Part shown: piece after piece, positions 18,526 through 43,235 of the stretch
Numbering within the stretch: the first letter of the stretch is position 1
How the letters are laid out: each line of letters opens with the position of its first letter
IMG/VR virus record: IMGVR_UViG_3300036760_000522
Coordinates: 186,001-250,000 of that record
Reading direction: 5' to 3' (one strand)
DNA: 64,000 nucleotides
Notes under the pieces: model-generated
The model's input: the letters and a program-made list of their open reading frames with translations, nothing else
Told to the model about the DNA's origin: nothing
Databases searched by the model: none
Position numbers and translations under genes: made by a program

Positions 18526-19326
18526 TTATTTTTCCCGACGCGGGACAACCCACTGTCTGGTAGTAGCTAACACCGCGGCTACATGCTTACAGACACGATT
18601 GTCACGCTCAGGGTCTCGTATGTTGGGTGGAGAGGCGGTTCCACGAGCCTTGCCGAGCTGAAAAGTTTCTTGCCGAGCGTGAAACTCTGGACCCAGCCAC
18701 TGCCATGCAGGACAAGAGCACGAAAGCTCGAGGTCAAGTTTCGTGAAATGTACTGCCGATCCCCGACGAACGGCTCGAACCTTTACGGCTTTGGCTCCGT
18801 TGCCACAATTCACACTAAAGATCCAACGCAGGTTTCTGGGATCAAATCGCTTCAAGGCAGCGGAACATCCAAGTGATCGCTCTTGGAACTTCGTATCCAA
18901 ACCTTCCAAGATCTGCTCCAGAGTTGCAGATGTCCGAATGCTTGAATCCCCGGACAACAACAGTGTCGGGGCTCCTTCCAAGCGCCAAAGCTCGACAACA
19001 AATGTCGCAGCCTTGTAGGTGTTGTCGGTATCGTCGCGATACGGATACTGTGTTTTTGTCGGAGGGTTTGGCGTGCCGAGACCAAAGTAGCTCGTCTCAC
19101 CACCGACGTCCCGAACATCTACACGTGAATGCTCCTTGGTCTTATCCGTAGGGTTCGTGATCCGCCAAATGGGCTCATCACGATTAGGCCGACGACGAGT
19201 GTCGTCAACGGGCTTCGCATGTGTCGACTGACCAGGAATGTCAGCGGGTAACGCGAGTCCACGACCAGGCGGATCTCCTGTAGGAGTCTCCGAAACCGCA
19301 CGCTGTGTTGTGAGGGCCTGTGACAC
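18526..19326 (-). CDS. SWIM zinc-finger protein
   Basis: CSCPAW...VCKHVAAVL. Confidence 0.8.
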   Translation of the reverse strand: MSQALTTQRAVSETPTGDPPGRGLALPADIPGQSTHAKPVDDTRRRPNRDEPIWRITNPTDKTKEHSRVDVRDVGGETSYFGLGTPNPPTKTQYPYRDDTDNTYKAATFVVELWRLEGAPTLLLSGDSSIRTSATLEQILEGLDTKFQERSLGCSAALKRFDPRNLRWIFSVNCGNGAKAVKVRAVRRGSAVHFTKLDLELSCSCPAWQWLGPEFHARQETFQLGKARGTASPPNIRDPERDNRVCKHVAAVLATTRQWVVPRREK

Positions 19327-19329
19327 AAC

Positions 19330-19437
19330 TTACTTCAACTTGAGTGCCCAAGACTCCAAACTATGCATGACCTTCTTGAACTCCGCAAGTGTGCGCACAG
19401 GGACAAGTGCGGACCGTCGATCGTAGCTGTAGGACAT
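19330..19437 (-). CDS. 35-aa peptide with MSYSYDRR leader
   Basis: Below the ORF-track cutoff: MSYSYDRRSALVPVRTLAEFKKVMHSLESWALKLK; AGGAG upstream; fills the gap exactly. Confidence 0.65.
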   Translation of the reverse strand: MSYSYDRRSALVPVRTLAEFKKVMHSLESWALKLK

Positions 19438-19450
19438 GATCTGACGACTC

Positions 19451-19756
19451 CTACCGACCGAACGATCGAACGATCCACTTTGATTTGAAGTCCCTCTCGA
19501 GACGCTCTATATACCGAAAAGCTTCTCCAATCGTGTGGTCAAGTTCGTACAAGTCTTTTTCGACCTTCTCGATTTCTGGATTGTCGTAGTTATCTGTGTA
19601 CACTACGCCGCTAGCGTCTCGACGCACGTCACCCAAAGCCAGGTGCAGGTGGCGAACCATAACACGAGCATCCAAAAGCTTGTCCACGGACTGCTTCAGG
19701 TAACCGAGAAGCTTGTCTGGAGATACTGACGCCCGTCGATCGTAACTGTAAGGCAT
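19451..19756 (-). CDS. Helical small protein with MPYSYDRRA leader; candidate internal virion protein
   Basis: 101-aa ORF whose 5' end is nearly identical to that of 19330..19437. Confidence 0.75.
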   Translation of the reverse strand: MPYSYDRRASVSPDKLLGYLKQSVDKLLDARVMVRHLHLALGDVRRDASGVVYTDNYDNPEIEKVEKDLYELDHTIGEAFRYIERLERDFKSKWIVRSFGR

Positions 19757-19762
19757 GATCTG

Positions 19763-21031
19763 TCAAACCTTCCAAGCGAGAGCGGCTTCCTTCTTCTTGA
19801 ACTGATTTGCTTCCCACTTCTTCTTGTCCTCTTCGGACATGTTTTCAGTGGGGTCTCCCGCCTCTTTCTTCTTGAACTGATTCGCCTCCCACTTCTTCTT
19901 GTCCTCTTCGGACATGTTCTCAGTGGGGTCCCCTGCTTCCTTTGTGAAGTTGTCCTTGTTCTTCTCGTGTTCAATCTTCCACTTCTTGGCGTCGGCTTCG
20001 GACATGTTCTCGGTCGGATCAGCCGGCTTGCCTTCTTCGAAGCGAGAGCGTTTGGCGTCGTCGTCTGAACTCGCCAAAACCGAGGGATCCAAGGAAAGTT
20101 CATTCTTGAGAAAACCGCCTAACCCAAGACGTGTTCTCATGATCTCACGTTTGAAGGCTTCCGACTTCTGTGTATCGATTGATCCGAGATGCACTAAAAC
20201 CGTTGCAATGCCGTCGACCACTTCGAGCAAATTGGTCAAAGACAACCGATAACGTTTCGCGTTAGCCTGGCGCATAGCCACCACAAGGCTCTTCCGCATG
20301 GTCTCAAACGCGATCGCTATTTGCGCGTCATCTACCGCAGCCAATTTGTTGACAACAGCATCCGGGACTGTGTGGCTCAAAACTGTAGCGAGTTCACGAG
20401 GGCTAGGACGTGAAGACCGATCTTCCAAAGAGCTTGCCAAATGCTCTAGCTGATCAGCAACCTGTCCGATGTCAGGCATCGTCGAGGCAACCACCGTAGG
20501 AGTTGTTATCACTCCTTCCGGATCCAAGCTCTCAACCAACGAGGCCACACGATCCAATGCCAATGCACCGCTCTCACGAGCTAGTTTTGCGATCTCACGG
20601 AGTTCGTCCGCGGCTTGTTTTGGCTTCATAGACACTCTATTTTCTTGCATCTGACGGTCCTCCGAACGACGCTGCACATAACGAATCCTCACGTCTTTGA
20701 GAACCCGTTCCAACTCTTCCACTTTCTCAGGCAAAAGCCCTTGCTTGATTTCCTCGTAGTCAAGACGATCTGCCGCGAGAGCTGTCGCCTCTAGAGCCTT
20801 TTGAAGCTTGAAGGCTGTCTCAGGGATGCTATTGACGAGATGGCCAGCGGTTTCGAAAATGTGATCCTTGTGTGAAGACTTGTTGATCAACACAGTTGTG
20901 TCCGCGATGTAGCGAACCAGTTGATCACAACGAAGACGCGCATCACCTAACTCCTCCATCAAATAGAGAAGAGCCCCCGCCTCCTTGGTCTGGTGCGCAG
21001 TCCGTTGCAAGCAACTGGTAAATTCATTCAC
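19763..21031 (-). CDS. Helical protein with C-terminal DPTENMSEED repeats; candidate head/internal protein
   Basis: 422-aa ORF with several KEA/RTA/KQA/KLA motifs. Confidence 0.8.
   Translation of the reverse strand: MNEFTSCLQRTAHQTKEAGALLYLMEELGDARLRCDQLVRYIADTTVLINKSSHKDHIFETAGHLVNSIPETAFKLQKALEATALAADRLDYEEIKQGLLPEKVEELERVLKDVRIRYVQRRSEDRQMQENRVSMKPKQAADELREIAKLARESGALALDRVASLVESLDPEGVITTPTVVASTMPDIGQVADQLEHLASSLEDRSSRPSPRELATVLSHTVPDAVVNKLAAVDDAQIAIAFETMRKSLVVAMRQANAKRYRLSLTNLLEVVDGIATVLVHLGSIDTQKSEAFKREIMRTRLGLGGFLKNELSLDPSVLASSDDDAKRSRFEEGKPADPTENMSEADAKKWKIEHEKNKDNFTKEAGDPTENMSEEDKKKWEANQFKKKEAGDPTENMSEEDKKKWEANQFKKKEAALAWKV
19785..20022 (-). repeat. 75-bp (25-aa) tandem repeat: two near-identical copies plus one diverged
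   Basis: KEAGDPTENMSEEDKKKWEANQFKK x2 and ADPTENMSEADAKKW. Confidence 0.9.
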
Positions 21032-21431
21032 CTGATGGATCCAATTTCTTCCGAAGAGCTTTCAAGTACGCTAGGGCGTTGGTATTCTCTTTGAGAGAAT
21101 ACAATGTGGTTTGACGAACAACCGTGACTCCTCGCTCTAGATCGTAGCGACCCAGTCCCCAGAGACGTGACATTGGGTCGTCACAAATCTTCAAGTCTCC
21201 CCCCTGCCTTGCGAAGTCGACAAGCTCGAGAGCAGAGACAACCTTTCGCTCAGGTATCAAAGGGCCGTTGCCGAACATAGGGAACTCCTCGAGAGCTTCC
21301 TTGTATCCAGGGTTTTGGACGATGATTCCGAACATGCCACGTTCATGATCATCCGCCCGATAAACGGTCAAACCATCCTTCTGGAGAGCTGAAATCCTCT
21401 CCAGAAGGAGCTCCTCCGTCATGGGCTTCAT
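21024..21431 (-). CDS. Hypothetical protein
   Basis: 135-aa ORF overlapping both neighbours. Confidence 0.7.
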   Translation of the reverse strand: MKPMTEELLLERISALQKDGLTVYRADDHERGMFGIIVQNPGYKEALEEFPMFGNGPLIPERKVVSALELVDFARQGGDLKICDDPMSRLWGLGRYDLERGVTVVRQTTLYSLKENTNALAYLKALRKKLDPSGE

Positions 21432-22351
21432 ACGAAAATCTCCGGGAACTCAGACATGATCGCGTCACGAGTCTCGACAGAGGTCTCAGCAGCCACAGCG
21501 GCTCGAAGCACATCCTGACGATCTCCATAGTCCGCCACCAAACGAGCGACCTTGCGCTTCACTGGCTGATCGAAGTCGTAGTTGTCTGGAAAGTCTGGAG
21601 TAATGGATCTTGCAACTTTCCTGCGTGTGTCAGTCGTGGCAACACGCGGAGTTAACGGTTTCATCGATCCAGGGCCATTCGTGTTTGTGATCCGCACGCC
21701 GTCCTGGACCACGACATCGTCCCCAGGACGTGCAGAAGTCTTGGGAGTACCGAGTGTCAAAGTAGACGAGATTCCTTCTTCACTAGCAATGCGCTTTGAA
21801 ACTGCGTCACGCCCAACGCTCATACTAGATTGAAAAAACGCAGCCTCATCTGTAGGCATACCAAGCAAAGCTTCGTCAACTGTCTGACCCTCTGCGGGGT
21901 CAATCTGAACATTGTTGAGCTGATTGTTGATCTCGGAAAGGCTTTCCAAACCTAGATTTGTCGAACTCTTCGCTGATGTGCGAAGCGTTCGAACGGTGTT
22001 CACATTGCCCGTCTCGATTGGGGCTTCTGTACTCGCCAGGTTCTTCTGCTGGACCGTTGGATCCATGACATTGCCGCCTTGAGCTGGACCGACTCTGATC
22101 CCAGCCCTCGGTGAAGCATGTCTCTTCGCAGTTGCAGGAGCGAGACTTGATGTTTCAGTTGCAACTCGACTCTTTAGCCAACCAGCTTTGATGGCCCCAC
22201 GAAGCTGAGGCAAAACGACCGGATCTTGGCCGTCGATCATCACTCGAGTCCCATCAAATAGGATGGTGGTGTCTTTTTCAACTGGAACGTTTAACCCTCC
22301 CAACAGGAAGCGTTGGGTGACTGTGTACTCGACGTATTGTTGTGTTCCCAT
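21428..22351 (-). CDS. Hypothetical protein (307 aa)
   Basis: Start reassigned to ATG 22351 (AAGGAG SD), which removes the overlap with the upstream gene. Confidence 0.75.
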   Translation of the reverse strand: MGTQQYVEYTVTQRFLLGGLNVPVEKDTTILFDGTRVMIDGQDPVVLPQLRGAIKAGWLKSRVATETSSLAPATAKRHASPRAGIRVGPAQGGNVMDPTVQQKNLASTEAPIETGNVNTVRTLRTSAKSSTNLGLESLSEINNQLNNVQIDPAEGQTVDEALLGMPTDEAAFFQSSMSVGRDAVSKRIASEEGISSTLTLGTPKTSARPGDDVVVQDGVRITNTNGPGSMKPLTPRVATTDTRRKVARSITPDFPDNYDFDQPVKRKVARLVADYGDRQDVLRAAVAAETSVETRDAIMSEFPEIFV

Positions 22352-22407
22352 TTTGGATCTCCTTCTATTTGTTTTTTTGGCGGATCGTTCAAGATCCGTA
22401 GAGTGTC

Positions 22408-23034
22408 TCAGTGCCCGTGTCCGAATGCCGTTTGGTACTTGGGCTTTCCGTCCCACTTGCTGGCAGAGTGTCCATCGATGGTGAATGACTGCCCCGACGG
22501 ACGGACTCGTTTGGTCGGACCCGTGAACTTGCCAGGAACGGCTACTACATAGTCAGTAGCCTCGTGCCCGCCTGTGGTTTTCTCTGCGATCTTTCGAACA
22601 AGGAGTACCTTGCCTCGAACCTCGACCACTTCATAGAAGTCGATGTTTGTCTGATCGTAGCCCCAACTCGTGTAGTAGATATCGCCAACGTCGGCATCGT
22701 GTTTGAACTCACGCCGCTCCTGTTGACGGTCCTCTTTCATCTTGAGCCGGGTTCTCTGGCCCGCAATTGTTTCTTCAATCTTCCGAGTCCGATCGGCCTC
22801 GCTGAGGAAACGGTAATTCCAGAGTGGCTTGTTGGCTTTGCCGGAGAAAGCGATCCCGTACGGCTTACTATTCGACTCCCAAGTCCAAATCGCGAGATCT
22901 GTACCCTCAGGGGTGATGGGATCCTTATCTCGTACCTCGGGCGGAAGATGAAACGACCGAGGTACGTGAAATCGACCCGGGAGGCCTGCCTCACGAAATC
23001 GGGCGACTACGTTCGAGATGATGACGGAATCCAC
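22408..23034 (-). CDS. SWGYDQTN-motif protein with an N-terminal VVARFREA leader
   Basis: VGDIYYTSWGYDQTNIDFYEVV; probable leaderless GTG start at 23034, 14 nt after the late-promoter motif. Confidence 0.75.
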   Translation of the reverse strand: MDSVIISNVVARFREAGLPGRFHVPRSFHLPPEVRDKDPITPEGTDLAIWTWESNSKPYGIAFSGKANKPLWNYRFLSEADRTRKIEETIAGQRTRLKMKEDRQQERREFKHDADVGDIYYTSWGYDQTNIDFYEVVEVRGKVLLVRKIAEKTTGGHEATDYVVAVPGKFTGPTKRVRPSGQSFTIDGHSASKWDGKPKYQTAFGHGH

Positions 23035-23057
23035 ATACACACAAACTGACAAAAGCA

Positions 23058-23687: not shown

Positions 23688-23788
23688 TCTTCAAGGAGGT
23701 GTACGTACTGACTAACAATGCAGCGGGTTCAAAAGTAGTTTCCGTCTCAGGTCCGTTTGATGGGATCGCTACCAGTGGAGGACTGTCA

Positions 23789-24157: not shown

Positions 24158-24171
24158 TCGGAAGTGTGGCC

Positions 24172-26289: not shown

Positions 26290-27174
26290 TCAAACTCTGG
26301 TCACGACCAGGCGGCTGACAGCACGTGGGTTGAACGCGCCGATGCCGATATTTTCAAAGACCGAAAATCCGATCAGACGGTTCTTGGGATCGTCGGCGCT
26401 CAAAACCGTGAGTTCTGTACGAACCGGGAACCGGCCAAAGTTCTCGGCTTCCGCGCAGATGTAGATGAACCCAACCGGTACGATTCTGCTCGTGATGATC
26501 TGCGCTCCCCACAACACAGCTTGTAGGCCTGTGTTGAGAAGGACGGCCTGGCTTTCGATATCCAGGATGTCCCGACCGAACTTGCGGATGTCCGCATAGT
26601 CGGTCGCGTTCATGAAGATCCGGGCGACCCGAAGCCCGTGACGCTCGACCTCTGCGAATGCGTCGGCCAAGAACGACGGTGAGACCGGTGCGACCACAGC
26701 CAAGTCAGGGTTGGTCTGACCGGGTAGTGTGTCGAAGCCGCTGACAGCAACGCTGTCAACGATTGCGAAACCGCGCTCGTCTTCAGCTGCTGCAATCTGC
26801 GCTTTCGCCAGGTCCTGAGCACGCTCGATCATGTCGAACCTGCGCTCCTTGATCTGGGAGAGCGGGATCTCAGGATTCGAAGCAATCTCGAAGACCGGGA
26901 AGATCACACGACGTGACTTCTGGATCGACTGGATGTTGGCGCCTTCTTCACCGACGACGAACGCCGTGACTTCAGGATCCTTGTCGTAAACAGGCAAGGC
27001 GCCGTCAGGCAGCTCTTCCACGAGGAAGCTCTTCCGGATGACTGCCACGTAGTCGCGTCGTAGACGCAACGATTGAATCATCGAAGCCGCAAGCTTCTCA
27101 CGCCCTTGCGGTGTTCTGATGTGTTCGCCGATTAGGCGCTGTCGGATCTCGTTACTGATTATGGAAGCTGACAT
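26290..27174 (-). CDS. Major capsid protein (HK97 fold)
   Basis: GREKLAASM...RRDY...ELPDGALPVYD, IFMNATDYADIRKFG, LWGAQII, IGAFNPRAV; follows protease, scaffold and decoration genes; strong terminator. Confidence 0.88.
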   Translation of the reverse strand: MSASIISNEIRQRLIGEHIRTPQGREKLAASMIQSLRLRRDYVAVIRKSFLVEELPDGALPVYDKDPEVTAFVVGEEGANIQSIQKSRRVIFPVFEIASNPEIPLSQIKERRFDMIERAQDLAKAQIAAAEDERGFAIVDSVAVSGFDTLPGQTNPDLAVVAPVSPSFLADAFAEVERHGLRVARIFMNATDYADIRKFGRDILDIESQAVLLNTGLQAVLWGAQIITSRIVPVGFIYICAEAENFGRFPVRTELTVLSADDPKNRLIGFSVFENIGIGAFNPRAVSRLVVTRV

Positions 27175-27194: not shown

Positions 27195-27818
27195 TCAGAC
27201 CCGGAGATCCAGAACCAGTAGTGTGTTGTTAGCGTCTGGGGCGATTCGTACGATCCCCATGAGGGTGACGAAGTCCCGGTTGTTCTGACCGGCTACGTTC
27301 CACTCGTAGGCATCTTCAATACGATTCGTCAAAAGACCATTGACGCTCGCGTAGAGTTTGTCGCCCTGCGCATACGTGAGAGCCGCAGAGCCACCAACTT
27401 GTTGTTGTGTTTCCCACAGGCTCACAGCGTCTGTGCCGAAACCACAGAGGAATGGGCCTCGACCCGAAGCGACGCCAGGCGTGTTCTCGAATGGGTTTCC
27501 GAGAGCGTCGTTGATGAAGAGACCGAGGGGCTTCTGGCCAGCAACGTAGGCCGCAGCAATCTGCACGGGGCCGCCGATGTAGCCGTTACCACCATCGGGG
27601 CGTGTGAACGCCACCGTGGCTCCCAAAACACCAACTCTGGTGATCCCACTCAAAGTGGTTGACTTGTTGGCTACTGCGGTGACGACTGGGGGATTCGCTT
27701 GCGTGAACGCATCTACCGTCAGGATCCCAATTGAGTTGCGGATCCCAGAGTGTAGAATTTGTACACGACCAGAGGTTTCCCTGAAGTCACCCGAGCCTTG
27801 ACCGATACTCAAAGGCAT
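27195..27818 (-). CDS. Capsid decoration/cement protein
   Basis: Position immediately before the MCP; PLGLFIND, YAQGDKLYASVNGLLT, MGIVRIAP. Confidence 0.7.
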   Translation of the reverse strand: MPLSIGQGSGDFRETSGRVQILHSGIRNSIGILTVDAFTQANPPVVTAVANKSTTLSGITRVGVLGATVAFTRPDGGNGYIGGPVQIAAAYVAGQKPLGLFINDALGNPFENTPGVASGRGPFLCGFGTDAVSLWETQQQVGGSAALTYAQGDKLYASVNGLLTNRIEDAYEWNVAGQNNRDFVTLMGIVRIAPDANNTLLVLDLRV

Positions 27819-27901: not shown

Positions 27902-29071
27902 CTAACGAAAAGCGTGACTCACGTCGGGTGGGGCGTCCCACAGACCTGCGAGGTTGTCAGATCCCGTCGCCGGGAGGTCTGATCCTGGAGTGCCGCCTAT
28001 ACGGCTCACACCCGGAGGTTTTGTTCCAAGTGTGCGACTTGCGGTCTTGACCCTGGTACCCGGATCATCAGCACTGGCAGTGATGCCAAAAGCTGCTTGA
28101 GCATTCTGGGCTTCAGGTGCTGAAGCGAAGATCTGTTGCAGATCAGGGTCCACTGCCACGTCATCGACCATCATCGACGGGCCCATGTCCTGAAAGAAGC
28201 CCATGTCATCATTGGCCATCTGCGGCTGTTGTTGAACGGGTTGCTGCTGCTGCTGAGCTTGCTGCTGCGGAGGCTGTTGTTGCAGCTGCTGCACAGCTTG
28301 TTGCACCATATCTTGGAGCTGAGCTTCTAGCTGCTGCTGTGACTGTACCTGCTGTTGCTGGACTTGTTGCTGAGCCAATTGCTGCACCATCTGGTTAGCA
28401 GTGACTGTGTCCCCCTGCTGCATGGCTGCGATCGCTTTTGCAGCAAGCTTCGCACGAGCTTCCTTCTGCTGTTCCTTATCATCATCTTGCTGCTGATCCT
28501 GAGCTTGCTTGCTCTTGTCTTTGTCAGCGTCGTCTTGCTGCTGCTGATCCTGAGCTTGCTTGCTCTTGTCTTTGTCAGCGTCGTCTTGCTGCTGCTGCTG
28601 CTGATCCTGAGCTTGCTTGCTCTTGTCTTTGTCAGCGTCGTCTTGCTGCTCGTCATCAGAGGCGAGACGTCGAACGGTATCGATCAAAACGCTATCGGGT
28701 AGGTGCATGAACCCGAGGGCCTGATCCTCCAAGAGTTGTGTCGAAGCGTTCTTGAGGAGATGCTTGGAAAGCTGGAGGCAGACCTCAGCTTTCTTCTCGA
28801 GCTTCTCGTCGTCTTCTTGCTCTTCGGCGGCGGTCTTGAAAGTGTCAGGCCTGAACGCAGGCATCCCGATCTCGTTTACACGAGTGTAGCCAGTAGAGTC
28901 GTACTCGTCCTTCCACCGACTCGGTGATACATCTTCTGCAAAGTCTGAAGGCGTACCGGTCACGTATGCGTCGGCAGCGGGTTGGGCCTGCAAATTCTCA
29001 GGCCGCATCGAATCAGGATCAGCCGCCAACTTGGCAATTCTCTCGCGGTCCCATGTAGATCGTTCACGCAT
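27902..29071 (-). CDS. Scaffolding/core protein with polyQ and acidic repeats
   Basis: Position between protease and capsid genes; low complexity; many (K/R)xA motifs. Confidence 0.75.
   Translation of the reverse strand: MRERSTWDRERIAKLAADPDSMRPENLQAQPAADAYVTGTPSDFAEDVSPSRWKDEYDSTGYTRVNEIGMPAFRPDTFKTAAEEQEDDEKLEKKAEVCLQLSKHLLKNASTQLLEDQALGFMHLPDSVLIDTVRRLASDDEQQDDADKDKSKQAQDQQQQQQDDADKDKSKQAQDQQQQDDADKDKSKQAQDQQQDDDKEQQKEARAKLAAKAIAAMQQGDTVTANQMVQQLAQQQVQQQQVQSQQQLEAQLQDMVQQAVQQLQQQPPQQQAQQQQQPVQQQPQMANDDMGFFQDMGPSMMVDDVAVDPDLQQIFASAPEAQNAQAAFGITASADDPGTRVKTASRTLGTKPPGVSRIGGTPGSDLPATGSDNLAGLWDAPPDVSHAFR
28485..28650 (-). repeat. Three tandem copies of DDADKDKSKQAQD(Q)n with n = 6, 4, 3
   Basis: Near-identical DNA units differing in CAG number. 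Confidence 0.92.
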
Positions 29072-30752: not shown

Positions 30753-31013
30753 TCAGCCTTCCAGCAATTTGATTGTCGAACGAAGTGTTTGACCGTGGCC
30801 GCTTACCAACAGCGTTTCGCAGAGATACCGAGCCGCAACGTGCCCCTTGAAGCTGTCGAGAAAGGTCTTCAAACGTTGCTTGTCATCAGTCTTGAGGATC
30901 TGTTGCAAGTCATTGAGAACCTCTGGACGGATACTGCCTGCGGTTACACACTCCTGATAGGCGTGTGCCGCTTGTAACAAGGCTTGTTTGTTCGTCATCA
31001 CACCAATCACCAC
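30753..31013 (-). CDS. Hypothetical protein
   Basis: Fills the gap; start uncertain. Confidence 0.6.
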   Translation of the reverse strand: MVIGVMTNKQALLQAAHAYQECVTAGSIRPEVLNDLQQILKTDDKQRLKTFLDSFKGHVAARYLCETLLVSGHGQTLRSTIKLLEG

Positions 31014-33727: not shown

Positions 33728-35565
33728 CCGAACCGACCTTCTTCCTGTTGTTGGGCTTCATCTTTGTGATTCATCTCGAGCTTCAGGTACTTGGAAATAC
33801 GTTCCAAGACATCCGTCTTGTCAACCAAGAGACGCCCCACCTCGTTGTAGAGCGAGCGCAAAACCTCATTGAATATAGCGTCGTTGACAGTGAAAAGGTC
33901 ACGTTCGATTTTGGACTTTGTATCACTCGGGTCGATATTCAACGTCTCAAGAATGAGGTCGATTGAGATCGATCCCTTCGAGTACAGATTGTACAGATCG
34001 TTGAATGTATCTTGGCTGTCTCTCAGCGGCAAGCGTGTGAAAGACAGCTTCGGATGCAACACGACTTCCTGTCCCCACTCGTCCTCCTCGATGAACCCCA
34101 TACGTCTTGCTATCGGGCGGAAAAGGTACTCCTCGACGTACTCCTGCAAGATCTCCCGAAGATGCAAGTAACGTTGATTGATGACCTCAAGCTTGAGACG
34201 GTCACCGGAGTACAAAGACTCCCCAGACATCAAACTTTCCGTCACGCCGAGACCTGCCAAGATTCTACGTTGGACTTGCTCATACTCCGCTGACAAATCC
34301 AGGAGACGATCTCGGGCCCCCATCTCCTCCCAGTGAACTTCATAGTTGGCGACAATCGAGTAGTCAGGATCGACAAGCGCCAGATCCACCTGCTCACGCA
34401 ACGCGTCAGTATCGATATCGCTCAACCCTTCGGCCCACACGATGCGCTTAGGAGTCATTGCCCGAGACGCGATGGACGTCTGAGCCTGCCGAAGTTTATC
34501 AACGTAGATCAGCGACCTAAGGCATCTCCCCAATATAGGTTGACCTATACTGATGTCAGCGTCTTTGCTGCCTGTCAAAATGTAACCGAACGATCCTGCG
34601 TCTGGATCGGTACCAAGGGGTATTGTCTTGCCTGCTTCGAGACATGTGCGAACTTCATTCGGAATCTGTTCGACCAATTTTTTCGCGTCTACATCTCCGG
34701 TTTTCGCACGCTCAATCATTTGACGGTCGCGCTCAGACGGAATCAACTCAATGAGAGGACGGTCACTGTAGCTGAACGTGGTGATTTTTACTTTATCAAT
34801 AGGTATTACTATCAGTCGATCCCACCCTGCATAGTGTTTCTTGTAGTAAGCTGATTCGGCCGCGTCCGTCTCGGGGGTGTCTTCCCAAATTGTCTTGTCT
34901 TGATCGACTGTAGTTCCGTCCTCACGCAAGACGGCTTCCTTGATCGTCTTCTTCGTGCGACCCAAGTCTTCCGGGACTTCAACTGAAGAGTCCTCCGCAA
35001 AAATGCACGTGACGCCGTCGAGCCAGTAATGATGTACGATCGTGATCAGTCGTTGGAACAACTTGATCTTCTTACACATCCGCTCGAAGCGAGACAGAAT
35101 GTACTTTCCGTAATTCTCCGGTGAGCTGAAACCCTCTGGTGCTCTGAGCGGTTTCGGGGCAGTCAGTCGAACTTTCGAGAGAGGAAGCTCTGTGTGGATG
35201 TCAATGGCTTGTCCGACGATCTCATCCGAGTTGTAGAAGTGCCGGAAAATCTCTCGTCGCTCACGAACGCTTTGCGGCAGCTCGAGAAAGTCCGTGGATA
35301 GCTGGGGGCTGTAGAAATTGCTCTGGGAGCTTTGCATGGTCCCACCAGCAGCACCCAAACCAATCCCCGTCCCGCCTCCAAGGCCCATGCTGCTGAGTCC
35401 GAACCCACCCAAAGCACCACTCGACTGAACACGACGAGCAAGACGCTCCTTGAACGTCAGCTGGCTACTGTACGCCCCAGACACGTAAGGCTTGGTTAAT
35501 CTGCGCGGATCTGGAACCTGAATCGCAGCGGAATACCGTCCCGGAAAATTTGAGTAAGCCATCAA
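33724..35565 (-). CDS. Portal protein
   Basis: FYNSDEIVGQAIDIHTELP, ILGRCLRSL, ILAGLGVTESLMSGE, IARRMGF; lies between terminase and head genes. Confidence 0.8.
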   Translation of the reverse strand: MMAYSNFPGRYSAAIQVPDPRRLTKPYVSGAYSSQLTFKERLARRVQSSGALGGFGLSSMGLGGGTGIGLGAAGGTMQSSQSNFYSPQLSTDFLELPQSVRERREIFRHFYNSDEIVGQAIDIHTELPLSKVRLTAPKPLRAPEGFSSPENYGKYILSRFERMCKKIKLFQRLITIVHHYWLDGVTCIFAEDSSVEVPEDLGRTKKTIKEAVLREDGTTVDQDKTIWEDTPETDAAESAYYKKHYAGWDRLIVIPIDKVKITTFSYSDRPLIELIPSERDRQMIERAKTGDVDAKKLVEQIPNEVRTCLEAGKTIPLGTDPDAGSFGYILTGSKDADISIGQPILGRCLRSLIYVDKLRQAQTSIASRAMTPKRIVWAEGLSDIDTDALREQVDLALVDPDYSIVANYEVHWEEMGARDRLLDLSAEYEQVQRRILAGLGVTESLMSGESLYSGDRLKLEVINQRYLHLREILQEYVEEYLFRPIARRMGFIEEDEWGQEVVLHPKLSFTRLPLRDSQDTFNDLYNLYSKGSISIDLILETLNIDPSDTKSKIERDLFTVNDAIFNEVLRSLYNEVGRLLVDKTDVLERISKYLKLEMNHKDEAQQQEEGRFG

Positions 35566-37802: not shown

Positions 37803-37808
37803 GCAACC

Positions 37809-39794
37809 TCAGAATCTGGCACGTCGAGGAACGAACCGCGGCGAAACCCCGTGGCGACGTGCCCGCATCATCTGGTATCGACGAGGCGTCATAGTTGTAT
37901 AGGTAGGGTCTCGCGAAAACAATGAGCCGTTGGCCGCATGTTTCTGATTTGCGAGAAACTCTGAAGAGAGGGACACAGCTCGTACGTATGCATCAGCAGA
38001 GTCGTCGAAAGAACCGTGCTTCTGAGGTGCTTGGACATTCACCATATACTTCGTCTTCAAAGTAGCCTGCAAAGCAAACAACTCCAGGATGAAATCCGAG
38101 TGCCGCTCTCCGTCACGAGCCCGCTCTGGAATAGGGAAGTCGTAGAGCCGAAGTCGACCGTCGTACATCAACATCTTGGTGTTTTGAAACATCTTGCTAC
38201 GTTGATCAGGTGTGAAAAACTGTGATGTGAATTGCTTGAGACCCTTCTTGTGCAACGCCTGCTCCAGAGGCAAACCGTTCCACCGGTCGAACAAGCCAGC
38301 TGTGACGTGAAACCACGAACAAACTAGCTCAATCCACTTGGCGATCTCGTCAAAATCTAGCCGTTCCACATCCTGCAAAGACTTTGCAAACTCTGTCGAA
38401 TAGCGACCTTCCAAATGTGGGTTTAGGTCTTTCCACTGACACCCTGCACGCCAAACCTCATGATAGTCCAGGACGACGCTGTCGCGCTCCGGGTGCGTGA
38501 TACAAATCACTGTACCGTCATTGACCAAACCTACGTCTAACCCCATCTGGTGAGGTTCACGAGGACGTGCACGAGACTTAGGTCTCAAGTCACGGTCGAC
38601 GCAAGCCAACAAGTCCGGCTTGCGTTCAATCCACCCAACGCTTTGATCGGAAAACCGGGCACCGTACTCCGTCATGAACACGACGGGGTTTTTGTGGTAC
38701 TCAGTCCGAAAGTAGGCGCCCGAGACTGTGGGGTTGACTTCCCAGGTCGGGGCTTGAATCGCCAAGGTGTAAGCCGCACCAGGATCGTTACGCATCGCCA
38801 AATCGTACTGGTCGAAAAACTTCCCTGACTTTCCTAAAGGTGATGAGATCAGGATGATTCTCGATTCAACGAGGGCTTCCTGTTGTGTCACGGAATCAAC
38901 GAGTATTCGTTTTGTGACTGGATCCTTTCGTGTGTAGGCCGCAGTCGAAGGCGTCAATGCCGAGTAAATCTCTTCAGCCGATCTTCCACCCTTAGTCAAG
39001 TAATGAGCGACCTCATCCAACACGATCAATATATTACCGGGACCACGCAAACTTCGTGCAACACAAGGTTTGAACGTCACACGAATCGACGCTTTACCGG
39101 AAAACGTCGTGTACTTACCGTCACTCTCTCGAGTAGAGACCCCGTGTTTCTCGAGATCACGCGGTGTACGAAAATTCATGAACGTGAGGTTGTTGTTGGC
39201 AATGAACGGCTTGAAATATGAACATCTCCCAACATGAGTTGCCACCTCATTGAACAACAATCCGGCTTGTTCCTTGTCCGTGCCAATGGACGTCAGCTGA
39301 ATCCGACTGCCATCAATGAGTCCGTAGTAAGCTTGAGGGTCATACAAATTCAGTAGCCGATAGACCTCATAGCTTGCAAAGATCCCTGCCATGGCAGTCT
39401 TGCCAGACCGTCGACCAACAGCCAAAACCAATTCACGTCGATCATATGAGGGCTCGTTGATGTTACAGCGACCCTCATTGTACAAATAGTGGAGGTACTC
39501 CACCTCCGTGAACTCGTACAACGTACGAGTTTTGAACATGTCCGTGATGATGATCCGATCTGTCAGATCATCCGGCAAACGATCCAACAGATCGAGTCCG
39601 TAGTAGAGCTTGATGATGAATCGCTGAACCGGGTAGAGCTTCATGCCGAGTCCCCAGGAACTCTCGGCATACGTGAGCACATCAAAAATCGGTGCTATTA
39701 CGTTGTTGTCACCATCTGCCTTGGCAATATCCCGACCAGCTTGTCGAATGAGTGATGCAAGCGACCCAGCGGGAGTCTCGATATTCGCAGCCAT
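37809..39794 (-). CDS. terL: Terminase large subunit
   Basis: Walker A GRRSGKT, Walker B LIVLDE, coupling motif ISSP, nuclease GLDVG, DRWN, DDSADA. Confidence 0.92.
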   Translation of the reverse strand: MAANIETPAGSLASLIRQAGRDIAKADGDNNVIAPIFDVLTYAESSWGLGMKLYPVQRFIIKLYYGLDLLDRLPDDLTDRIIITDMFKTRTLYEFTEVEYLHYLYNEGRCNINEPSYDRRELVLAVGRRSGKTAMAGIFASYEVYRLLNLYDPQAYYGLIDGSRIQLTSIGTDKEQAGLLFNEVATHVGRCSYFKPFIANNNLTFMNFRTPRDLEKHGVSTRESDGKYTTFSGKASIRVTFKPCVARSLRGPGNILIVLDEVAHYLTKGGRSAEEIYSALTPSTAAYTRKDPVTKRILVDSVTQQEALVESRIILISSPLGKSGKFFDQYDLAMRNDPGAAYTLAIQAPTWEVNPTVSGAYFRTEYHKNPVVFMTEYGARFSDQSVGWIERKPDLLACVDRDLRPKSRARPREPHQMGLDVGLVNDGTVICITHPERDSVVLDYHEVWRAGCQWKDLNPHLEGRYSTEFAKSLQDVERLDFDEIAKWIELVCSWFHVTAGLFDRWNGLPLEQALHKKGLKQFTSQFFTPDQRSKMFQNTKMLMYDGRLRLYDFPIPERARDGERHSDFILELFALQATLKTKYMVNVQAPQKHGSFDDSADAYVRAVSLSSEFLANQKHAANGSLFSRDPTYTTMTPRRYQMMRARRHGVSPRFVPRRARF

Positions 39795-39799
39795 GGCAT

Positions 39800-40396: not shown

Positions 40397-40761
40397 AAAT
40401 CCTCCGTCTTGATCAAATACTGAGACAAGTTGTAAACAGAGTCGTACCCACGATCCTTTGGAACTTGTTTCTCAATCGCCCGTTCCAAATCACGCCCTGT
40501 CTCGTACAAGTTTTGTACCGCGAGGTTCTTTGGTGACGGAGAGAACACATCCTTTGGGCGTATGTCCCGACGATCGGGCTCAACAGCTTCCGGATTGTTA
40601 CCTGCCAAATCAGCCCCCTGTTCACGCTGCAAAGGGACCGTGATCCCCTTTGGTTTGTTGACAGGTTGTGTATTCTTCCGCGCACGAGAGCGTCCGCCTG
40701 GCAATTGATCCGCCAAACGTAAATACGCCTGTACAACTCTCCGTGCAGATTCCGAACTCAC
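40393..40761 (-). CDS. Small protein with RRVVQAYLRLA leader; candidate internal virion protein
   Basis: 122-aa ORF overlapping both neighbours. Confidence 0.75.
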   Translation of the reverse strand: MSSESARRVVQAYLRLADQLPGGRSRARKNTQPVNKPKGITVPLQREQGADLAGNNPEAVEPDRRDIRPKDVFSPSPKNLAVQNLYETGRDLERAIEKQVPKDRGYDSVYNLSQYLIKTEDL

Positions 40762-42044
40762 AAGTTTTGTCTACCTATTTGTATCGAGGCACTCGACACA
40801 CACGAGTCTTTTTCCGCCGTGATCGTGATTGGCTTTTGTGTCAACCCGTATTCCTTCACAATCGAAGGGGGTGCAGAAGCCCCGGAAGCGACCTTCTGAA
40901 CAAGTACAGGTTCTGGCCTTGGGGGATCAGCTGAAATTCGCTTGTTGAGGACTGAACAGAGATCCGTTCCTGTGGCTCGGTGAACACAGGAAGCGCACTT
41001 CGGTCCTTGTTTCACACGCACGACTTCTGTCTTTGCTCGAAACTGACGAGCAGCCGTACGGCAAGACCCGTAATCGTCGTAGACAGTAGGATCAATGAAG
41101 GTCCTTCCTTGACCAGACGCGAGCAACTCACGCAACGCAACAGCCTCCGCCTTCAATTCCGCGGGCAAAAACTTCGTCTGCAAAGAAGACAACAGCGCAT
41201 TGCCTTGCATCCCAGTGTTCACCAACTGAGACGCAACACGAACTACTGGTGTCAGACGTGGAAGATCTTTGCGGATCAAACGATCCGGAGAGATCAGAGC
41301 GCTTCCCTCTACCACTTTCGGAAAACTAGTACGTGGAGGCGCGGAAGGAGGCGTAGGTAGGAATGCATTTCGTATACGAGTTTTTGGGTCTGCCTCAGCA
41401 CTTCCTCGGACCCCACGAGACTGCTCCACGCTCTCTGCCAAGGCGGGAGTGTAAGGAACGTCGAGAACGAGCTGTTTGTGAAAAACACCACAATGGTTGT
41501 TGTGTTTGTGACAACAGTCTTGACACGCGGTCTTTGCAACCAAGTACCTACTAGTGCTCGCAAAACGGTGCACGAAATCGATCTCATTGGCAGATCGATT
41601 GGCACAGTTGGGGAAGTCTTCAGCTGCGATATAGAGACGGCCCAAAAGTCCTCGCTCTGCAAGTGTCTGTAACACTTCGTTCTTCGCGAGCAGCAGACTT
41701 GTCGTATCATGGTGTGACAGCAAGGCGGTCCGGATCTCTTGTGAATTCGCTGTGCGCATGACAGCCAAACGTGCTGTGCGAACAACTTCACGAATCGTCG
41801 CCTCTGGTGAGGACCGCAGCTTCCCATGAGCTGTAGAAAGATCCCCCATCGTTTTAGGTTCACCCCGATTGGGAACCAAGCGCTCCGAAGGTCCGTCTTC
41901 CAAACCCCACAAAACTTGCAGATCCGGAACCGTGTCCAGATTCTGTTTCGGAAGCACAGTGTCTCGACTCCTCAGCCAGGACAAATCCACCAGGCTGCTA
42001 TCTTTGATCATGCGCGAGAGGTTCATCAGGTCTCCTGGGGCCAA
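40758..42044 (-). CDS. Cys-cluster protein (two CxxC...C modules)
   Basis: ACQDCCHKHNNHCGVFHKQL and KCASCVHR...CSVLNKRI; RVA/RTA/KVA motifs. Confidence 0.78.
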   Translation of the reverse strand: MAPGDLMNLSRMIKDSSLVDLSWLRSRDTVLPKQNLDTVPDLQVLWGLEDGPSERLVPNRGEPKTMGDLSTAHGKLRSSPEATIREVVRTARLAVMRTANSQEIRTALLSHHDTTSLLLAKNEVLQTLAERGLLGRLYIAAEDFPNCANRSANEIDFVHRFASTSRYLVAKTACQDCCHKHNNHCGVFHKQLVLDVPYTPALAESVEQSRGVRGSAEADPKTRIRNAFLPTPPSAPPRTSFPKVVEGSALISPDRLIRKDLPRLTPVVRVASQLVNTGMQGNALLSSLQTKFLPAELKAEAVALRELLASGQGRTFIDPTVYDDYGSCRTAARQFRAKTEVVRVKQGPKCASCVHRATGTDLCSVLNKRISADPPRPEPVLVQKVASGASAPPSIVKEYGLTQKPITITAEKDSCVSSASIQIGRQNL

Positions 42045-43003
42045 TCGTAGAGTGGATCTGGCCGGTATTCGACGGTAGTCGGTGAAAAACGCACGTAAGG
42101 AGTTGTCACGTCTTGCTCGCTGTAACTCGTGTTCATCAAACCCCGATCAATAACCGACAGACTGGGCTCGTGATCCGGCAGCTGAGATTGTGTGTTGACC
42201 AGATTACCTCCGTCACCCCGATAGTAATCAGCCCGCGCAACAGGACTCTCGCTGTCGTTCGGAAGAAAGCCAAACGAATGCCGACTGTCACTCATGGGTG
42301 AAGACTCGTGTGTCGGAGGGACATCTTGCCCCGGCTGCTGCGACACAGGGCCCCAGTACCCGTAATCAATTCCTTGTCCTCGGGCACCATAGCCCATACC
42401 AAAATCCCACGCGTCAGTTGGAGTTTCGTCCCACGCGTCATCAGGAACGGTCGATGTGGCAAAATCCAAACTGGACCAAACCTGATCGTCTTCCGAAAGA
42501 GGATCCCCACAACAACCGGCTGTCCAATCGTAACGGTACGAAGCCTCCTTAGGTCTCGACTTGTTGTTGGAATTCTCCGTGTCCTGCAAAACTTTCTCGG
42601 ATCTTTCAGGTCGGTTACGAAGGTCTTCAGACTCTTCTACGAAAAGCTCAATGTCCTTCTGATCATCCGATGGAAGCTCCTTCAGTTCAGCCTTCCAATG
42701 AGGTGCATTGATTTCGTCGTGTAGGACGTCCGTAGCAGCACTCAAATTCTCACACGCCTGGTTCAACATGCGCCGGACGTCTTGCACGCTCGAGACGTAG
42801 CCACGTCCACCAATCAGCCCATCTGGACTGACTGTGGAGCTCTTGATTCGACTAAAATGGCGATACGCCGACAGTGCGTGGCCTAGACCCACGCTGGCCG
42901 CCCACAACGTCCTTGCAAGAGGTTTGAGAGATCGCGAAGCAAACGGGTAATCCTTTGGGATCTGTCGTTTCAACGCTGTCGGAGGCGGAGGTTGCTCAGG
43001 CAT
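42026..43003 (-). CDS. Hypothetical protein with acidic low-complexity C-terminal half
   Basis: 325-aa ORF. Confidence 0.75.
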   Translation of the reverse strand: MPEQPPPPTALKRQIPKDYPFASRSLKPLARTLWAASVGLGHALSAYRHFSRIKSSTVSPDGLIGGRGYVSSVQDVRRMLNQACENLSAATDVLHDEINAPHWKAELKELPSDDQKDIELFVEESEDLRNRPERSEKVLQDTENSNNKSRPKEASYRYDWTAGCCGDPLSEDDQVWSSLDFATSTVPDDAWDETPTDAWDFGMGYGARGQGIDYGYWGPVSQQPGQDVPPTHESSPMSDSRHSFGFLPNDSESPVARADYYRGDGGNLVNTQSQLPDHEPSLSVIDRGLMNTSYSEQDVTTPYVRFSPTTVEYRPDPLYDWPQET

Positions 43004-43235
43004 TCGACTCCTTCAGTGGGGCTCCGTTGTCCTGAAATAGGCGCTCAATATACAGGTCTCCGCCGTCACGTCGGATCCCCCATAAATCTCGTGATGCTAA
43101 ATTGACTAGCGTGTCGGCTGATACTCGCCGAAAACCGTTCAAGTCAGGGATCGTTGCGACCTTTACACGTGTTGTCACACGTGTTGGGGCACTAAGAAAG
43201 CTGTCGAAGCTTGTAGTCGAAAATTCGATCCTCAT
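42996..43235 (-). CDS. Small hypothetical protein
   Basis: RDLWGI...YIERLF; overlaps both neighbours. Confidence 0.7.
   Translation of the reverse strand: MRIEFSTTSFDSFLSAPTRVTTRVKVATIPDLNGFRRVSADTLVNLASRDLWGIRRDGGDLYIERLFQDNGAPLKESNA

What the first reader, a model, noticed from the sequence alone, without database searches (positions are those of the whole stretch)
18526..43235. (K/R)-x-A motif is frequent in head-module proteins: predicted prohead protease cleavage code
Seen: scaffold (KLA-A, KTA-A, RLA-S, KQA-Q x3, KEA-R, KTA-S), protease (KVA-T, KAA-Q, RVA-N, KQA-G), 422-aa protein (RTA-H, KEA-G x3, KQA-A, KLA-A, KEA-A), 428-aa protein (RTA, RVA-S, KVA-S), 31007 (KSA-A, KQA-T), 42026 (KEA-S), 42996 (KVA-T) and 18526 (KAA-T). 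Many fall at domain or repeat boundaries, and each tandem repeat unit carries one. Known: T4 gp21 and phiKZ gp175 cut many head proteins at short motifs ending in Glu, and herpesvirus assemblin cuts after Ala. Inference: this protease cuts after (K/R)xA, so the motif could predict the virion-internal proteome.
Basis: partly seen in the sequence, partly recalled or inferred. Interest (0 to 1): 0.68.

Follow-up and report, generated by a model that had tools for sequence, protein, structure and literature searches.

The report
Predicted prohead-protease cleavage motif (K/R)-x-A↓S
In this 301-kb jumbo phage and dozens of uncultivated relatives, the scaffold, the head protease and a few neighbouring head-module proteins are packed with a short (K/R)-x-Ala(-Ser) motif. 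It is most likely the cutting site of a herpesvirus-like head-maturation protease, but no cleavage has been measured.

Summary
In the finding region, [KR]xA[SAG] occurs 38 times against 17.0 expected from composition (p 8e-6). The replication block gives 19/14.8 and the rest of the genome 174/172.

Seven proteins carry the excess: scaffold, protease, and the 220-, 311-, 342-, 422- and 428-aa proteins. The other 17 ORFs sit at chance, including 18526, 42026 and 42996.

Relatives give the strongest evidence. In 43 non-redundant positional scaffold orthologs, KxA is the most over-represented gap-1 pair (z 20.8). [KR]xA is 2.4x and [KRH]xAS 10.9x expectation. All 43 are enriched, and reversed or re-spaced controls are flat.

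Sites are conserved inside otherwise unalignable sequence: near the scaffold C-terminus, and just after the protease domain. The decoration protein is depleted.

The protease model has the T4 gp21 / herpesvirus assemblin fold (Z 10.5 and 7.7). His121, Ser172 and His198 are conserved.

Two other full-length relatives repeat the head-block enrichment.

Verdict: the enrichment is real, and a cleavage code, refined to (K/R)-x-A↓S, is the best explanation. It remains unproven. A bare [KR]xA match is too common to predict substrates.

The parts
29148..30566 (-). Prohead protease, 472 aa. The catalytic domain covers about residues 39-252. A C-terminal domain of about 190 aa follows a linker.
   Evidence: It hits phrog_18299 'head maturation protease' (E 7e-13) and phrog_2774 (E 4e-23). 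The AF2 model built with alignment A1 has pLDDT 73.5. Its best PDB matches are T4 gp21 5jbl (Z 10.5, rmsd 2.8 A over 141 aa) and herpesvirus proteases (Z 5.7-7.7). His121, Ser172 and His198 are conserved out to phage G gp19, Tunturi_5 gp331 and Myrna gp97.
29721..29732 (-). KAA|Q, protease residues 279-282: candidate self-release site just after the catalytic domain.
   Evidence: [KRH]xA stands at this column in 26 of 33 orthologs, and a variable acidic linker follows. Phage G gp19 has KIA|S at the aligned place. The site lies in the low-confidence linker of the model.
30543..30554 (-). KYA|N, protease residues 5-8: conserved N-terminal candidate site.
   Evidence: Conserved in 29 of 33 orthologs. 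It lies in the disordered N-terminus of the model.
27902..29071 (-). Scaffolding protein, 389 aa. It has a conserved N-terminal domain of about 140 aa, an acidic and Q-rich variable middle, and a conserved C-terminal tail.
   Evidence: It has no family hit. An ORF stands in the same place in 66 loci, between protease and decoration protein where both are present. It holds 12 [KR]xA against 4.6 expected (shuffle p 0.0005) and 3 [KRH]xAS against 0.28.
28037..28048 (-). KTA|S, scaffold residues 342-345: candidate cut 45 residues from the C-terminus that would detach the conserved tail.
   Evidence: Conserved at the exact column in 35 of 42 orthologs and within 6 columns in 41 of 42. The acidic sequence upstream is unalignable. 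The conserved tail R-P-Q-P-R-K-A-S-x-G-V-K-T-L-G follows. In 36 of 43 scaffolds the last [KRH]xA[SAG] lies 15-31 residues from the C-terminus.
29024..29032 (-). KLA|A, scaffold residues 14-16: conserved N-terminal site. The clade consensus is R/K-K-A-S-x-P-P.
   Evidence: Conserved in 32 of 42 orthologs, 22 of them with Ser next.
28742..28795 (-). KKA (residues 93-95) and KNA|S (107-110), inside the conserved N-terminal scaffold domain.
   Evidence: Conserved in 31 of 42 and 25 of 42 orthologs.
28488..28650 (-). Three tandem repeat units (DDADKDKSKQAQDQQQQ), each carrying KQA|Q.
   Evidence: Tandem Repeats Finder reports period 51/57 with 3 copies. These sites are not independent and are poorly conserved in orthologs.
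40758..42044 (-). Cys-rich 428-aa protein upstream of the large terminase: the strongest candidate substrate outside scaffold and protease.
   Evidence: It holds 12 [KR]xA against 5.4 expected (p 0.002) and 4 [KRH]xAS against 0.53. All 13 orthologs are enriched. RTA|R at 89 and RVA|S at 269 are invariant in 13 of 13, with about 30-45% identity in the flanks. Its ortholog is the most enriched of 271 ORFs in record G002 (24/8.4; [KR]xAS 10/0.70).
19763..21031 (-). 422-aa protein with C-terminal KEA|G-bearing repeats: candidate substrate.
   Evidence: It holds 11 [KR]xA against 7.1 expected. Its ortholog family has 17 [KRH]xAS against 3.5 expected.
31007..31669 (-). 220-aa protein immediately upstream of the protease: candidate substrate.
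   Evidence: Across 8 orthologs the family gives [KR]xA 50/22.3 and [KRH]xAS 14/1.5. KQA|T at 147 is conserved in 6 of 8.
21428..22456 (-). 342-aa protein: enriched in [KR]xA, but a weak candidate.
   Evidence: It holds 12 against 4.2 expected (p 0.0005). The family is 1.9x enriched, has no Ser preference, and only two sites are conserved.
27085..27096 (-). KLA|A, MCP residues 27-30: possible N-terminal trimming site. Unresolved.
   Evidence: K-L-A is conserved in the clade, in Tunturi_5 and in Myrna despite N-termini of variable length. Phage G has A-L-A here. The MCP family as a whole is not enriched.
26290..27174 (-). Major capsid protein, 294 aa, HK97 fold, no delta domain.
   Evidence: It matches PF05065 (E 5e-6) and phrog_2522 (E 9e-51).
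27195..27818 (-). 207-aa protein in the position of the phage G decoration protein gp26. The motif is depleted here.
   Evidence: In 35 non-redundant orthologs, [KR]xA is 21 observed against 40.8 expected and [KR]xA[SAGT] is 3 against 16.5. The gene order is that of phage G, where gp26 is annotated as capsid decoration.
33724..35565 (-). Portal protein, not enriched.
   Evidence: It hits phrog_16240 (E 7e-26). The window protein has 4 [KR]xA against 4.4 expected, and the family gives 22/19.3 with no [KRH]xAS.
37809..39794 (-). Large terminase, not enriched.
   Evidence: It hits phrog_2 (E 3e-19). It has 5 [KR]xA against 6.6 expected.

Best explanation
The 472-aa protein at 29148-30566 is a serine prohead protease of the T4 gp21 / HK97 gp4 / herpesvirus assemblin fold. 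Its predicted catalytic triad is His121-Ser172-His198. Its substrate code has the P3-x-P1 form typical of this fold, here basic-x-Ala, with Ser preferred at P1': (K/R)-x-A↓S.

Inside the prohead it would do the following.
(a) Cut itself at KAA|Q (residue 279), freeing the catalytic domain from its C-terminal domain.
(b) Cut the scaffold at KTA|S (residue 342), detaching the conserved C-terminal tail, which presumably holds the scaffold to the shell.
(c) Chop the rest of the scaffold at its many further sites, so the pieces can leave before DNA enters.
(d) Process a few other head-module proteins: the 428-aa protein most clearly, then the 422-, 220- and possibly the 311- and 342-aa proteins.

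Shown here:
- the enrichment, its specificity and its conservation;
- its restriction to the head block;
- the protease fold and the conserved His/Ser/His.

Inferred:
- that the motif is a cleavage site;
- that the cut falls after Ala;
- what the released pieces do.
For: 1. [KR]xA[SAG] is 38/17.0 in the head region, 19/14.8 in the replication block and 174/172 in the rest of the genome.

2. An unbiased scan of 43 non-redundant scaffold orthologs ranks KxA as the top gap-1 pair (504/206, z 20.8), followed by RxA (z 12.6) and the adjacent pair AS (z 16).

3. The signal is specific. [KR]xA is 2.36x and [KRH]xAS 10.9x (226/20.8). Controls are flat: Ax[KR] 1.15x, [KR]A 1.26x, [KR]xxA 0.98x, [DE]xA 0.70x. 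All 43 scaffolds are enriched.

4. Motifs of the T4 and phiKZ type are not enriched: [LIV]xE 1.20x and [SAG]xE 0.93x.

5. The excess persists in the unalignable middle of the scaffolds, at 2.2-6x in 8 of 8 clusters. This points to turnover of sites with a maintained density.

6. Sites are positionally conserved in variable surroundings: near the scaffold C-terminus and N-terminus, and after the protease domain.

7. Protease orthologs are 4.3x enriched for [KRH]xAS. The decoration protein is depleted, and MCP and portal are flat.

8. Two further full-length records replicate the result. In G002 the head block gives [KR]xAS 30/4.6 (p 4e-15) and the rest 2.07x. In G001 the head block is 3.0x and the rest 1.34x. 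In G002, five of the ten ORFs most enriched in [KR]xA lie in the head block.

9. Distant cultured relatives show the same excess. Tunturi_5 gp332 gives 20/8.6 (p 5e-4). Myrna gp97, a protease-scaffold fusion, gives 34/19 (p 5e-4) and has RTA|S 20 residues from its end. Phage G gp19 gives 10/3.8.

10. The protease model has the expected fold, and H121, S172 and H198 are conserved out to phage G and Myrna.

11. From established knowledge, every characterised member of this fold reads P3-x-P1. T4 gp21 cuts after L/I-x-E, phiKZ gp175 after S/A/G-x-E, and herpesvirus assemblin after V/L/I-x-A↓S. Assemblin has a release site after the protease domain and a maturation site near the scaffold C-terminus.

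12. The genome shows no Pkinase and no ClpP.
Against: - No proteomic or biochemical data exist for this phage or its clade, so both the cleavage and the scissile bond are inferred.
- In the window phage the Ser preference is weak: only 3 of the 12 scaffold sites have Ser next.
- Several enriched sites sit inside folded, conserved regions and are probably structural, for example KVA at protease residue 216, where A218 is invariant.
- A 134-residue Q-rich stretch of the window scaffold has no site.
- The portal is enriched in one relative (G001, 12/4.2) but not in the others.
- In G002 the rest of the genome also shows a 2x excess of [KR]xAS, which is unexplained.
- Orthologs are phylogenetically related, so z-scores overstate independence.
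- The set of '7 enriched proteins' in the window was picked after seeing the counts.
- Co-folding of the protease with the scaffold tail gave no verdict.
Confidence: 0.65

Rival explanations
1. The motif is functional and head-specific but is not a scissile site. It could be a docking or exosite motif for the protease, the shell or the portal. It could also be a target of another modification, since K/R-K-A-S resembles a basophilic kinase site.
For: The conservation and enrichment show selection, not cleavage. Lys is 3.4x enriched at P2 and Ser 4.3-4.5x at P1', which resembles R/K-x-S kinase sites.
Against: Ala at the middle position is near-obligatory: 226 of 312 [KRH]x?S matches have it, which is unusual for a kinase site. 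No protein kinase domain was found in the genome. The same motif sits at the two places where assemblin-type proteases are known to cut: after the protease domain and near the scaffold C-terminus. The density of about one site per 30 residues in scaffolds fits degradation better than docking.
Confidence: 0.2
2. The excess comes from composition, helical periodicity, low-complexity sequence and tandem repeats, and has no sequence-specific function.
For: K, R and A are common, and about 900 [KR]xA matches are expected by chance in this genome. A non-head 1337-aa repeat protein scores as highly as the scaffold.
Against: Reversed, adjacent and gap-2 controls on the same proteins are flat (0.98-1.26x) while [KR]xA is 2.36x and [KRH]xAS 10.9x. 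All 43 scaffolds are enriched. The result is repeated in the variable middle regions, in two further genomes and in distant cultured relatives.
Confidence: 0.05
3. The motif marks cleavage by a different protease, of the host or of the phage, and not by the product of 29148-30566.
For: Nothing links the motif to this enzyme except adjacency, fold analogy and the motif's presence in the protease itself.
Against: No ClpP-type protease was found in the genome. The hosts of the clade appear diverse: Tunturiibacter, Bacillus/Lysinibacillus and Mycobacterium for the cultured relatives. Yet the motif follows the protease family. The P3-x-P1 form matches this fold.
Confidence: 0.07

Closest known systems
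Herpesvirus assemblin (UL26/UL80 protease) with its release (R) and maturation (M) sites, consensus V/L/I-x-A↓S
   Same: - The protease model matches VZV, PRV, HSV-2, HCMV and KSHV proteases at Z 5.7-7.7.
- A His-Ser-His set is conserved.
- Ala is inferred at P1 and Ser preferred at P1'.
- One conserved site lies just after the protease domain, and one lies about 15-45 residues from the scaffold C-terminus.
- In Myrna the protease and scaffold are fused in one 1211-aa protein, as in UL26.
   Different: - P3 is basic (K/R), not aliphatic. [LIV]xAS is only 2.2x enriched against 10.6x for [KR]xAS.
- There are many sites per scaffold, about one [KR]xA per 30 residues, where herpesviruses have one or two.
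- In this phage the protease and scaffold are separate genes.
- No sequence-level similarity was detected.
T4 gp21 and phiKZ gp175 / SPN3US gp245 prohead proteases (motifs L/I-x-E and S/A/G-x-E)
   Same: T4 gp21 is the best structural match (5jbl, Z 10.5). The code has the same P3-x-P1 logic. Many head proteins, and multiple sites per propeptide, would be processed, as described for SPN3US (PMC10052503).
   Different: P1 is Ala, not Glu. Glu-type motifs are not enriched here. The MCP has no long propeptide.
HK97 gp4-type protease (Pfam Peptidase_S78) with a delta-domain MCP
   Same: The protease gene stands upstream of an HK97-fold MCP.
   Different: The protease has no Pfam hit at E 0.01. A separate 389-aa scaffold takes the place of a delta domain. 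A conserved CxxC...C insert lies between the catalytic Ser and the second His.

Membership tests
Assemblin / gp21 / gp4-fold prohead serine proteases | Characteristic beta-barrel fold | tested here: met
   The AF2 model has pLDDT 73.5, with the core at 85-97. VIA-align gives Z 10.5 to T4 gp21 (rmsd 2.8 A over 141 of 164 residues) and Z 5.7-7.7 to five herpesvirus proteases. The top three Foldseek hits are chains of 5jbl (E 3e-3). MCE-domain chains at Z 6-7 are background.
Assemblin / gp21 / gp4-fold prohead serine proteases | Catalytic Ser and His (His-Ser-His in herpesviruses) | tested here: inconclusive
   H121 and S172 are invariant, and H198 nearly invariant (90% or more), in 22 clade members. 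All three are conserved in phage G gp19, Tunturi_5 gp331 and Myrna gp97, whereas H50, S128 and H156 are not. An intein interrupts the gene at the SMGC motif in a relative. The three-dimensional proximity of the three residues was not checked.
Assemblin / gp21 / gp4-fold prohead serine proteases | Sequence membership in a curated family (Peptidase_S78, S77 or S21) | tested here: not met
   There is no Pfam hit at E 0.01 and no PDB profile hit. Only PHROG families match: phrog_18299 'head maturation protease' and phrog_2774.
Assemblin / gp21 / gp4-fold prohead serine proteases | Gene next to the scaffold and major capsid protein genes | tested here: met
   The order protease, scaffold, 207-aa protein, MCP holds in the window and recurs across the IMG/VR loci that carry these genes.
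Assemblin / gp21 / gp4-fold prohead serine proteases | Cleaves itself and the scaffold during head maturation | not testable with these tools
   This needs mass spectrometry or an in vitro assay.
Herpesvirus-type A↓S specificity | Ala at P1 and Ser at P1' | tested here: inconclusive
   The statistics fit: 226 [KRH]xAS against 20.8 expected, Ala obligatory, Ser 4.3x enriched. The scissile bond itself is inferred by analogy.
Herpesvirus-type A↓S specificity | Aliphatic residue (V/L/I) at P3 | tested here: not met
   At P3 of xAS, K is 4.2x, R 6.1x and H 3.3x enriched, while L and V are about 1x and I 1.6x.
T4/phiKZ-type specificity | Motif ending in Glu at P1 | tested here: not met
   In scaffolds, [SAG]xE is 0.93x and [LIV]xE 1.20x.

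The most novel reading that the evidence does not exclude
A whole lineage of large and huge phages may share an assemblin-fold protease that reads basic-x-Ala↓Ser. The lineage would run from cluster C mycobacteriophages through phage G and Tunturi_5 to hundreds of uncultivated 290-620-kb genomes. On this reading, the P1-Ala/P1'-Ser preference and the two-site logic of herpesviruses are ancestral to the phage-herpesvirus protease family and did not arise within herpesviruses. The two sites are release after the protease domain and maturation near the scaffold C-terminus. Motif density together with conservation would then identify scaffolds and internal head proteins in uncultivated huge phages, where these proteins have no detectable homologs.
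Probability: 0.4. Interest if true: 0.72.

Novelty: new variant of a known kind. Interest (0 to 1): 0.56.

Why it matters
Scaffolds and internal head proteins of huge phages evolve too fast for homology searches. The scaffold here has no family hit, and BLAST often fails even between relatives. A conserved cleavage code would give a sequence-only handle on them.

It would also add a third specificity class, basic-x-Ala, to the two known for phage proteases of this fold. That class is closest to the herpesvirus A↓S rule, which bears on the shared ancestry of tailed-phage and herpesvirus capsid maturation.

The prediction is directly testable, because relatives with the same protease family are in culture: Tunturi_5, phage G and cluster C mycobacteriophages.

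Tried and rejected
- Megablast of the protease-scaffold DNA against the phage collection found nothing.
- The single-sequence AF2 model of the whole protease was unusable (pLDDT 36.6). It was replaced by an alignment-based model of residues 1-300.
- A profile of the protease against PDB sequences gave no hit.
- Pfam gave nothing for the protease, the scaffold, or the 207-, 220-, 311-, 342-, 422- and 428-aa proteins. PHROGs gave nothing for the scaffold or the 207-, 220-, 311-, 342-, 422- and 428-aa proteins.
- The protein atlas search gave no usable hit for the 428-aa protein.
- Co-folding the protease domain with scaffold residues 320-389 gave no verdict, which is evidence neither for nor against binding.
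- Literature searches found no earlier description of a (K/R)-x-A motif for phage G, the Tunturi phages, cluster C mycobacteriophages or other phages. The library lacks most subscription-journal papers, so this is weak evidence of absence.
- Including His at P3 is doubtful. Much of the HxA excess in scaffolds comes from one conserved H-P-A motif near the N-terminus.
- A kinase-site reading and a ClpP alternative were considered. No such domains were found in the genome.
- The reads tools were not used.

Full report
**Context**

The window is bases 186001-250000 of a single 301,550-bp virus record with direct terminal repeats. Nearly all its genes run on the minus strand.

Family scans give this map:
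- large terminase, 37809-39794
- portal, 33724-35565
- a 5-hmdU DNA kinase, 32642-33727
- two unknown proteins, 31675-32610 (311 aa) and 31007-31669 (220 aa)
- prohead protease, 29148-30566
- a 389-aa protein with no family hit, in the scaffold position, 27902-29071
- a 207-aa protein in the decoration position, 27195-27818
- an HK97-fold MCP, 26290-27174

From 43232 onwards lie a sigma factor, an exonuclease, a clamp loader and a primase. So the 'head module' of the finding is a mixed block, not purely structural.

The nearest records by MCP are an uncultured 485-kb phage (72%), Tunturiibacter phage Tunturi_5 (47%), Bacillus phage G (37%) and cluster C mycobacteriophages (26%). IMG/VR holds at least 287 relatives, and 80 loci were fetched.

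**Observation**

Counts corrected for each protein's own composition:

| Set | Motif | Observed / expected | Ratio |
|---|---|---|---|
| Finding region | [KR]xA | 109 / 77.4 | 1.41x |
| Rest of genome | [KR]xA | 788 / 742.2 | 1.06x |
| Finding region | [KR]xA[SAG] | 38 / 17.0 | 2.23x (p 8e-6) |
| Replication block | [KR]xA[SAG] | 19 / 14.8 | 1.29x |
| Rest of genome | [KR]xA[SAG] | 174 / 172.3 | 1.01x |

Seven proteins carry the excess: the scaffold, the protease, and the 220-, 311-, 342-, 422- and 428-aa proteins. The other 17 ORFs of the region are at 0.92x. The single hits in 18526, 42026 and 42996 are what chance gives.

A caution comes from a 1337-aa protein far from the head genes. It scores as highly as the scaffold because RxA(SD) is part of its 20-residue repeat.

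**Comparative evidence**

A scaffold-position ORF was found in 66 loci, though BLAST often fails to link these ORFs.

In 43 scaffolds non-redundant at 70% identity, an unbiased scan of all residue pairs puts KxA first among gap-1 pairs (504/206, z 20.8). RxA follows (z 12.6), and AS ranks second among adjacent pairs (z 16).

Shuffle tests give [KR]xA 2.36x and [KRH]xAS 10.9x (226/20.8). Controls on the same sequences are flat: Ax[KR] 1.15x, [KR]A 1.26x, [KR]xxA 0.98x, [DE]xA 0.70x. All 43 scaffolds are individually enriched.

Ala is obligatory in the middle position, in 226 of 312 [KRH]x?S matches. Ser is 4.3x enriched after Ala. K and R are 4-6x enriched at P3 of xAS. Glu-type motifs of T4 and phiKZ are not enriched.

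The excess persists in the unalignable middle of the scaffolds. This fits selection for site density and not for particular positions.

Some positions are nevertheless conserved in variable surroundings:
- R/K-K-A-S near the scaffold N-terminus (32 of 42).
- K-x-A-S ahead of the conserved C-terminal tail (35 of 42 at the exact column, 41 of 42 nearby). In 36 of 43 scaffolds the last site is 15-31 residues from the end.
- K-A-A just after the protease domain (26 of 33), followed by a variable acidic linker.

Results by family:
- Protease orthologs are 4.3x enriched in [KRH]xAS, and the decoration protein is depleted.
- MCP, portal and the 18526 family are flat.
- The 428-aa family is enriched in all 13 orthologs and has two invariant sites.
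- The 220- and 422-aa families are 9x and 5x enriched in [KRH]xAS.
- The 342-aa family is weaker and shows no Ser preference.

**Replication**

Two relatives were fetched whole. The head block is defined from the 428-aa ortholog to the MCP.

| Record | Size | Head block [KR]xAS | Rest of record |
|---|---|---|---|
| G002 | 290 kb | 30 / 4.6 (p 4e-15) | 2.07x |
| G001 | 323 kb | 15 / 5.0 (p 2e-4) | 1.34x |

In G002 the three most enriched of 271 ORFs are the 428-aa ortholog, the scaffold and a small head-block ORF.

Cultured distant relatives show the same excess:
- Tunturi_5 gp332, 20/8.6.
- Tunturi_5 gp328, 26/14.9.
- Myrna gp97, 34/19. It is annotated as a tape measure but is a protease-scaffold fusion by its phrog_2774-type N-terminus.
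- Phage G gp19, 10/3.8, with KIA|S aligned to the window's KAA|Q.

**The enzyme**

An alignment-based AF2 model of residues 1-300 has pLDDT 73.5. It matches T4 gp21 best (Z 10.5) and then five herpesvirus proteases (Z 5.7-7.7).

His121, Ser172 and His198 are conserved out to phage G and Myrna, while other His and Ser residues conserved within the clade are not. The spacing is 51 and 26 residues. A conserved CxxC...C insert lies between Ser172 and His198.

The candidate sites at residues 5, 30, 244 and 279 fall in low-confidence, presumably flexible, parts of the model. KVA at 216 is buried in the fold and is probably structural.

**Mechanism**

From established knowledge, all characterised members of this fold read P3-x-P1. 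T4 cuts after L/I-x-E, phiKZ and SPN3US after S/A/G-x-E, and herpesviruses after V/L/I-x-A↓S. Herpesviruses have a release site after the protease domain and a maturation site near the scaffold C-terminus. The cleavage-site work of DiIanni et al. 1993 is cited in PMC12474303, and the SPN3US data are in PMC10052503.

The motif found here has the same form and sits at the same two landmark places. I therefore take (K/R)-x-A↓S to be the cleavage code of this protease, with confidence 0.65.

The scissile bond, the actual substrates and the role of the released scaffold tail are all inferred. The main rival is a functional motif that is not cut (0.2). A composition or repeat artefact is largely excluded at clade level (0.05).

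**Limits**

- There are no proteomic data.
- Orthologs are related, so z-scores overstate independence.
- The Ser preference is weak in the window phage itself.
- The list of seven proteins was chosen after seeing the counts.
- The portal is enriched in one relative only.
- The genome-wide 2x excess of [KR]xAS in G002 is unexplained.
- As a predictor of the internal proteome, a bare [KR]xA match is useless (978 matches against 896 expected). Only density combined with conservation carries information.

**Novelty**

No description of this motif was found in the searchable literature.

It is a new specificity variant of a well-known kind of system, and it applies to a large and mostly uncultivated phage lineage.

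Noticed in passing
L005:5103-7928 and L060:4614-7424 (also L012, L016, L038, L058, L068): In seven relatives the prohead protease ORF is 919-1008 aa long. Two were scanned, and each carries an intein (Hint plus LAGLIDADG domains). There are two insertion points: at the SMGC motif next to the predicted catalytic Ser172, and near the invariant N94-D98 stretch.
   Followed up: partly
window 32642-33727 (-): A 5-hmdU DNA kinase (PF18723, E 6e-96) sits between the portal and the head protease genes. This suggests the phage carries hypermodified thymidine in its DNA.
   Followed up: no
window 24172-26070 (-): A 632-aa ORF directly downstream of the MCP combines a LAGLIDADG endonuclease domain, HTH domains and only the start of an N6/N4 DNA methylase domain. 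It may be a mobile element or a fusion.
   Followed up: no
G000:C1:52539-56552 (+), outside the window; window 1153-7641 (-): A 1337-aa protein is built of about 20-residue repeats of the form ...D-R-x-A-S-D-x-I-x-V-x-D. The 2162-aa window protein has three copies of the same R-x-A-S-D motif near its N-terminus. These proteins are probably fibre or surface proteins. Any cleavage-motif scan will report them as false positives.
   Followed up: partly
L084:4701-8336 (Mycobacterium phage Myrna gp97): gp97 is annotated 'tape measure', but its N-terminus is the prohead protease domain (H, S and H conserved). It lies just upstream of gp98 and the MCP. It looks like a 1211-aa protease-scaffold fusion, as in herpesvirus UL26.
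   Followed up: partly
G002 (record of L024), ORFs outside 141525-159409: Outside the head block, [KR]xAS is still 2.07x over expectation (87/42.1). This is unlike the window genome (1.0x once the repeat proteins are removed) and is unexplained.
   Followed up: no
window 28950-28970 region (scaffold residues ~35-45) and orthologs: Scaffold N-termini share a conserved ...D-H-P-A motif and an R-x-R-x-T-W start. The H-P-A motif inflates the apparent HxA enrichment and may not be a cleavage site.
   Followed up: no
L085 and L098 (IMGVR_UViG_3300037424_001177, 159 kb): This contig is a very close relative of the window phage: 96% and 90% amino-acid identity for the 428- and 342-aa proteins. It could be used to look at repeat-number variation in the scaffold.
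   Followed up: no
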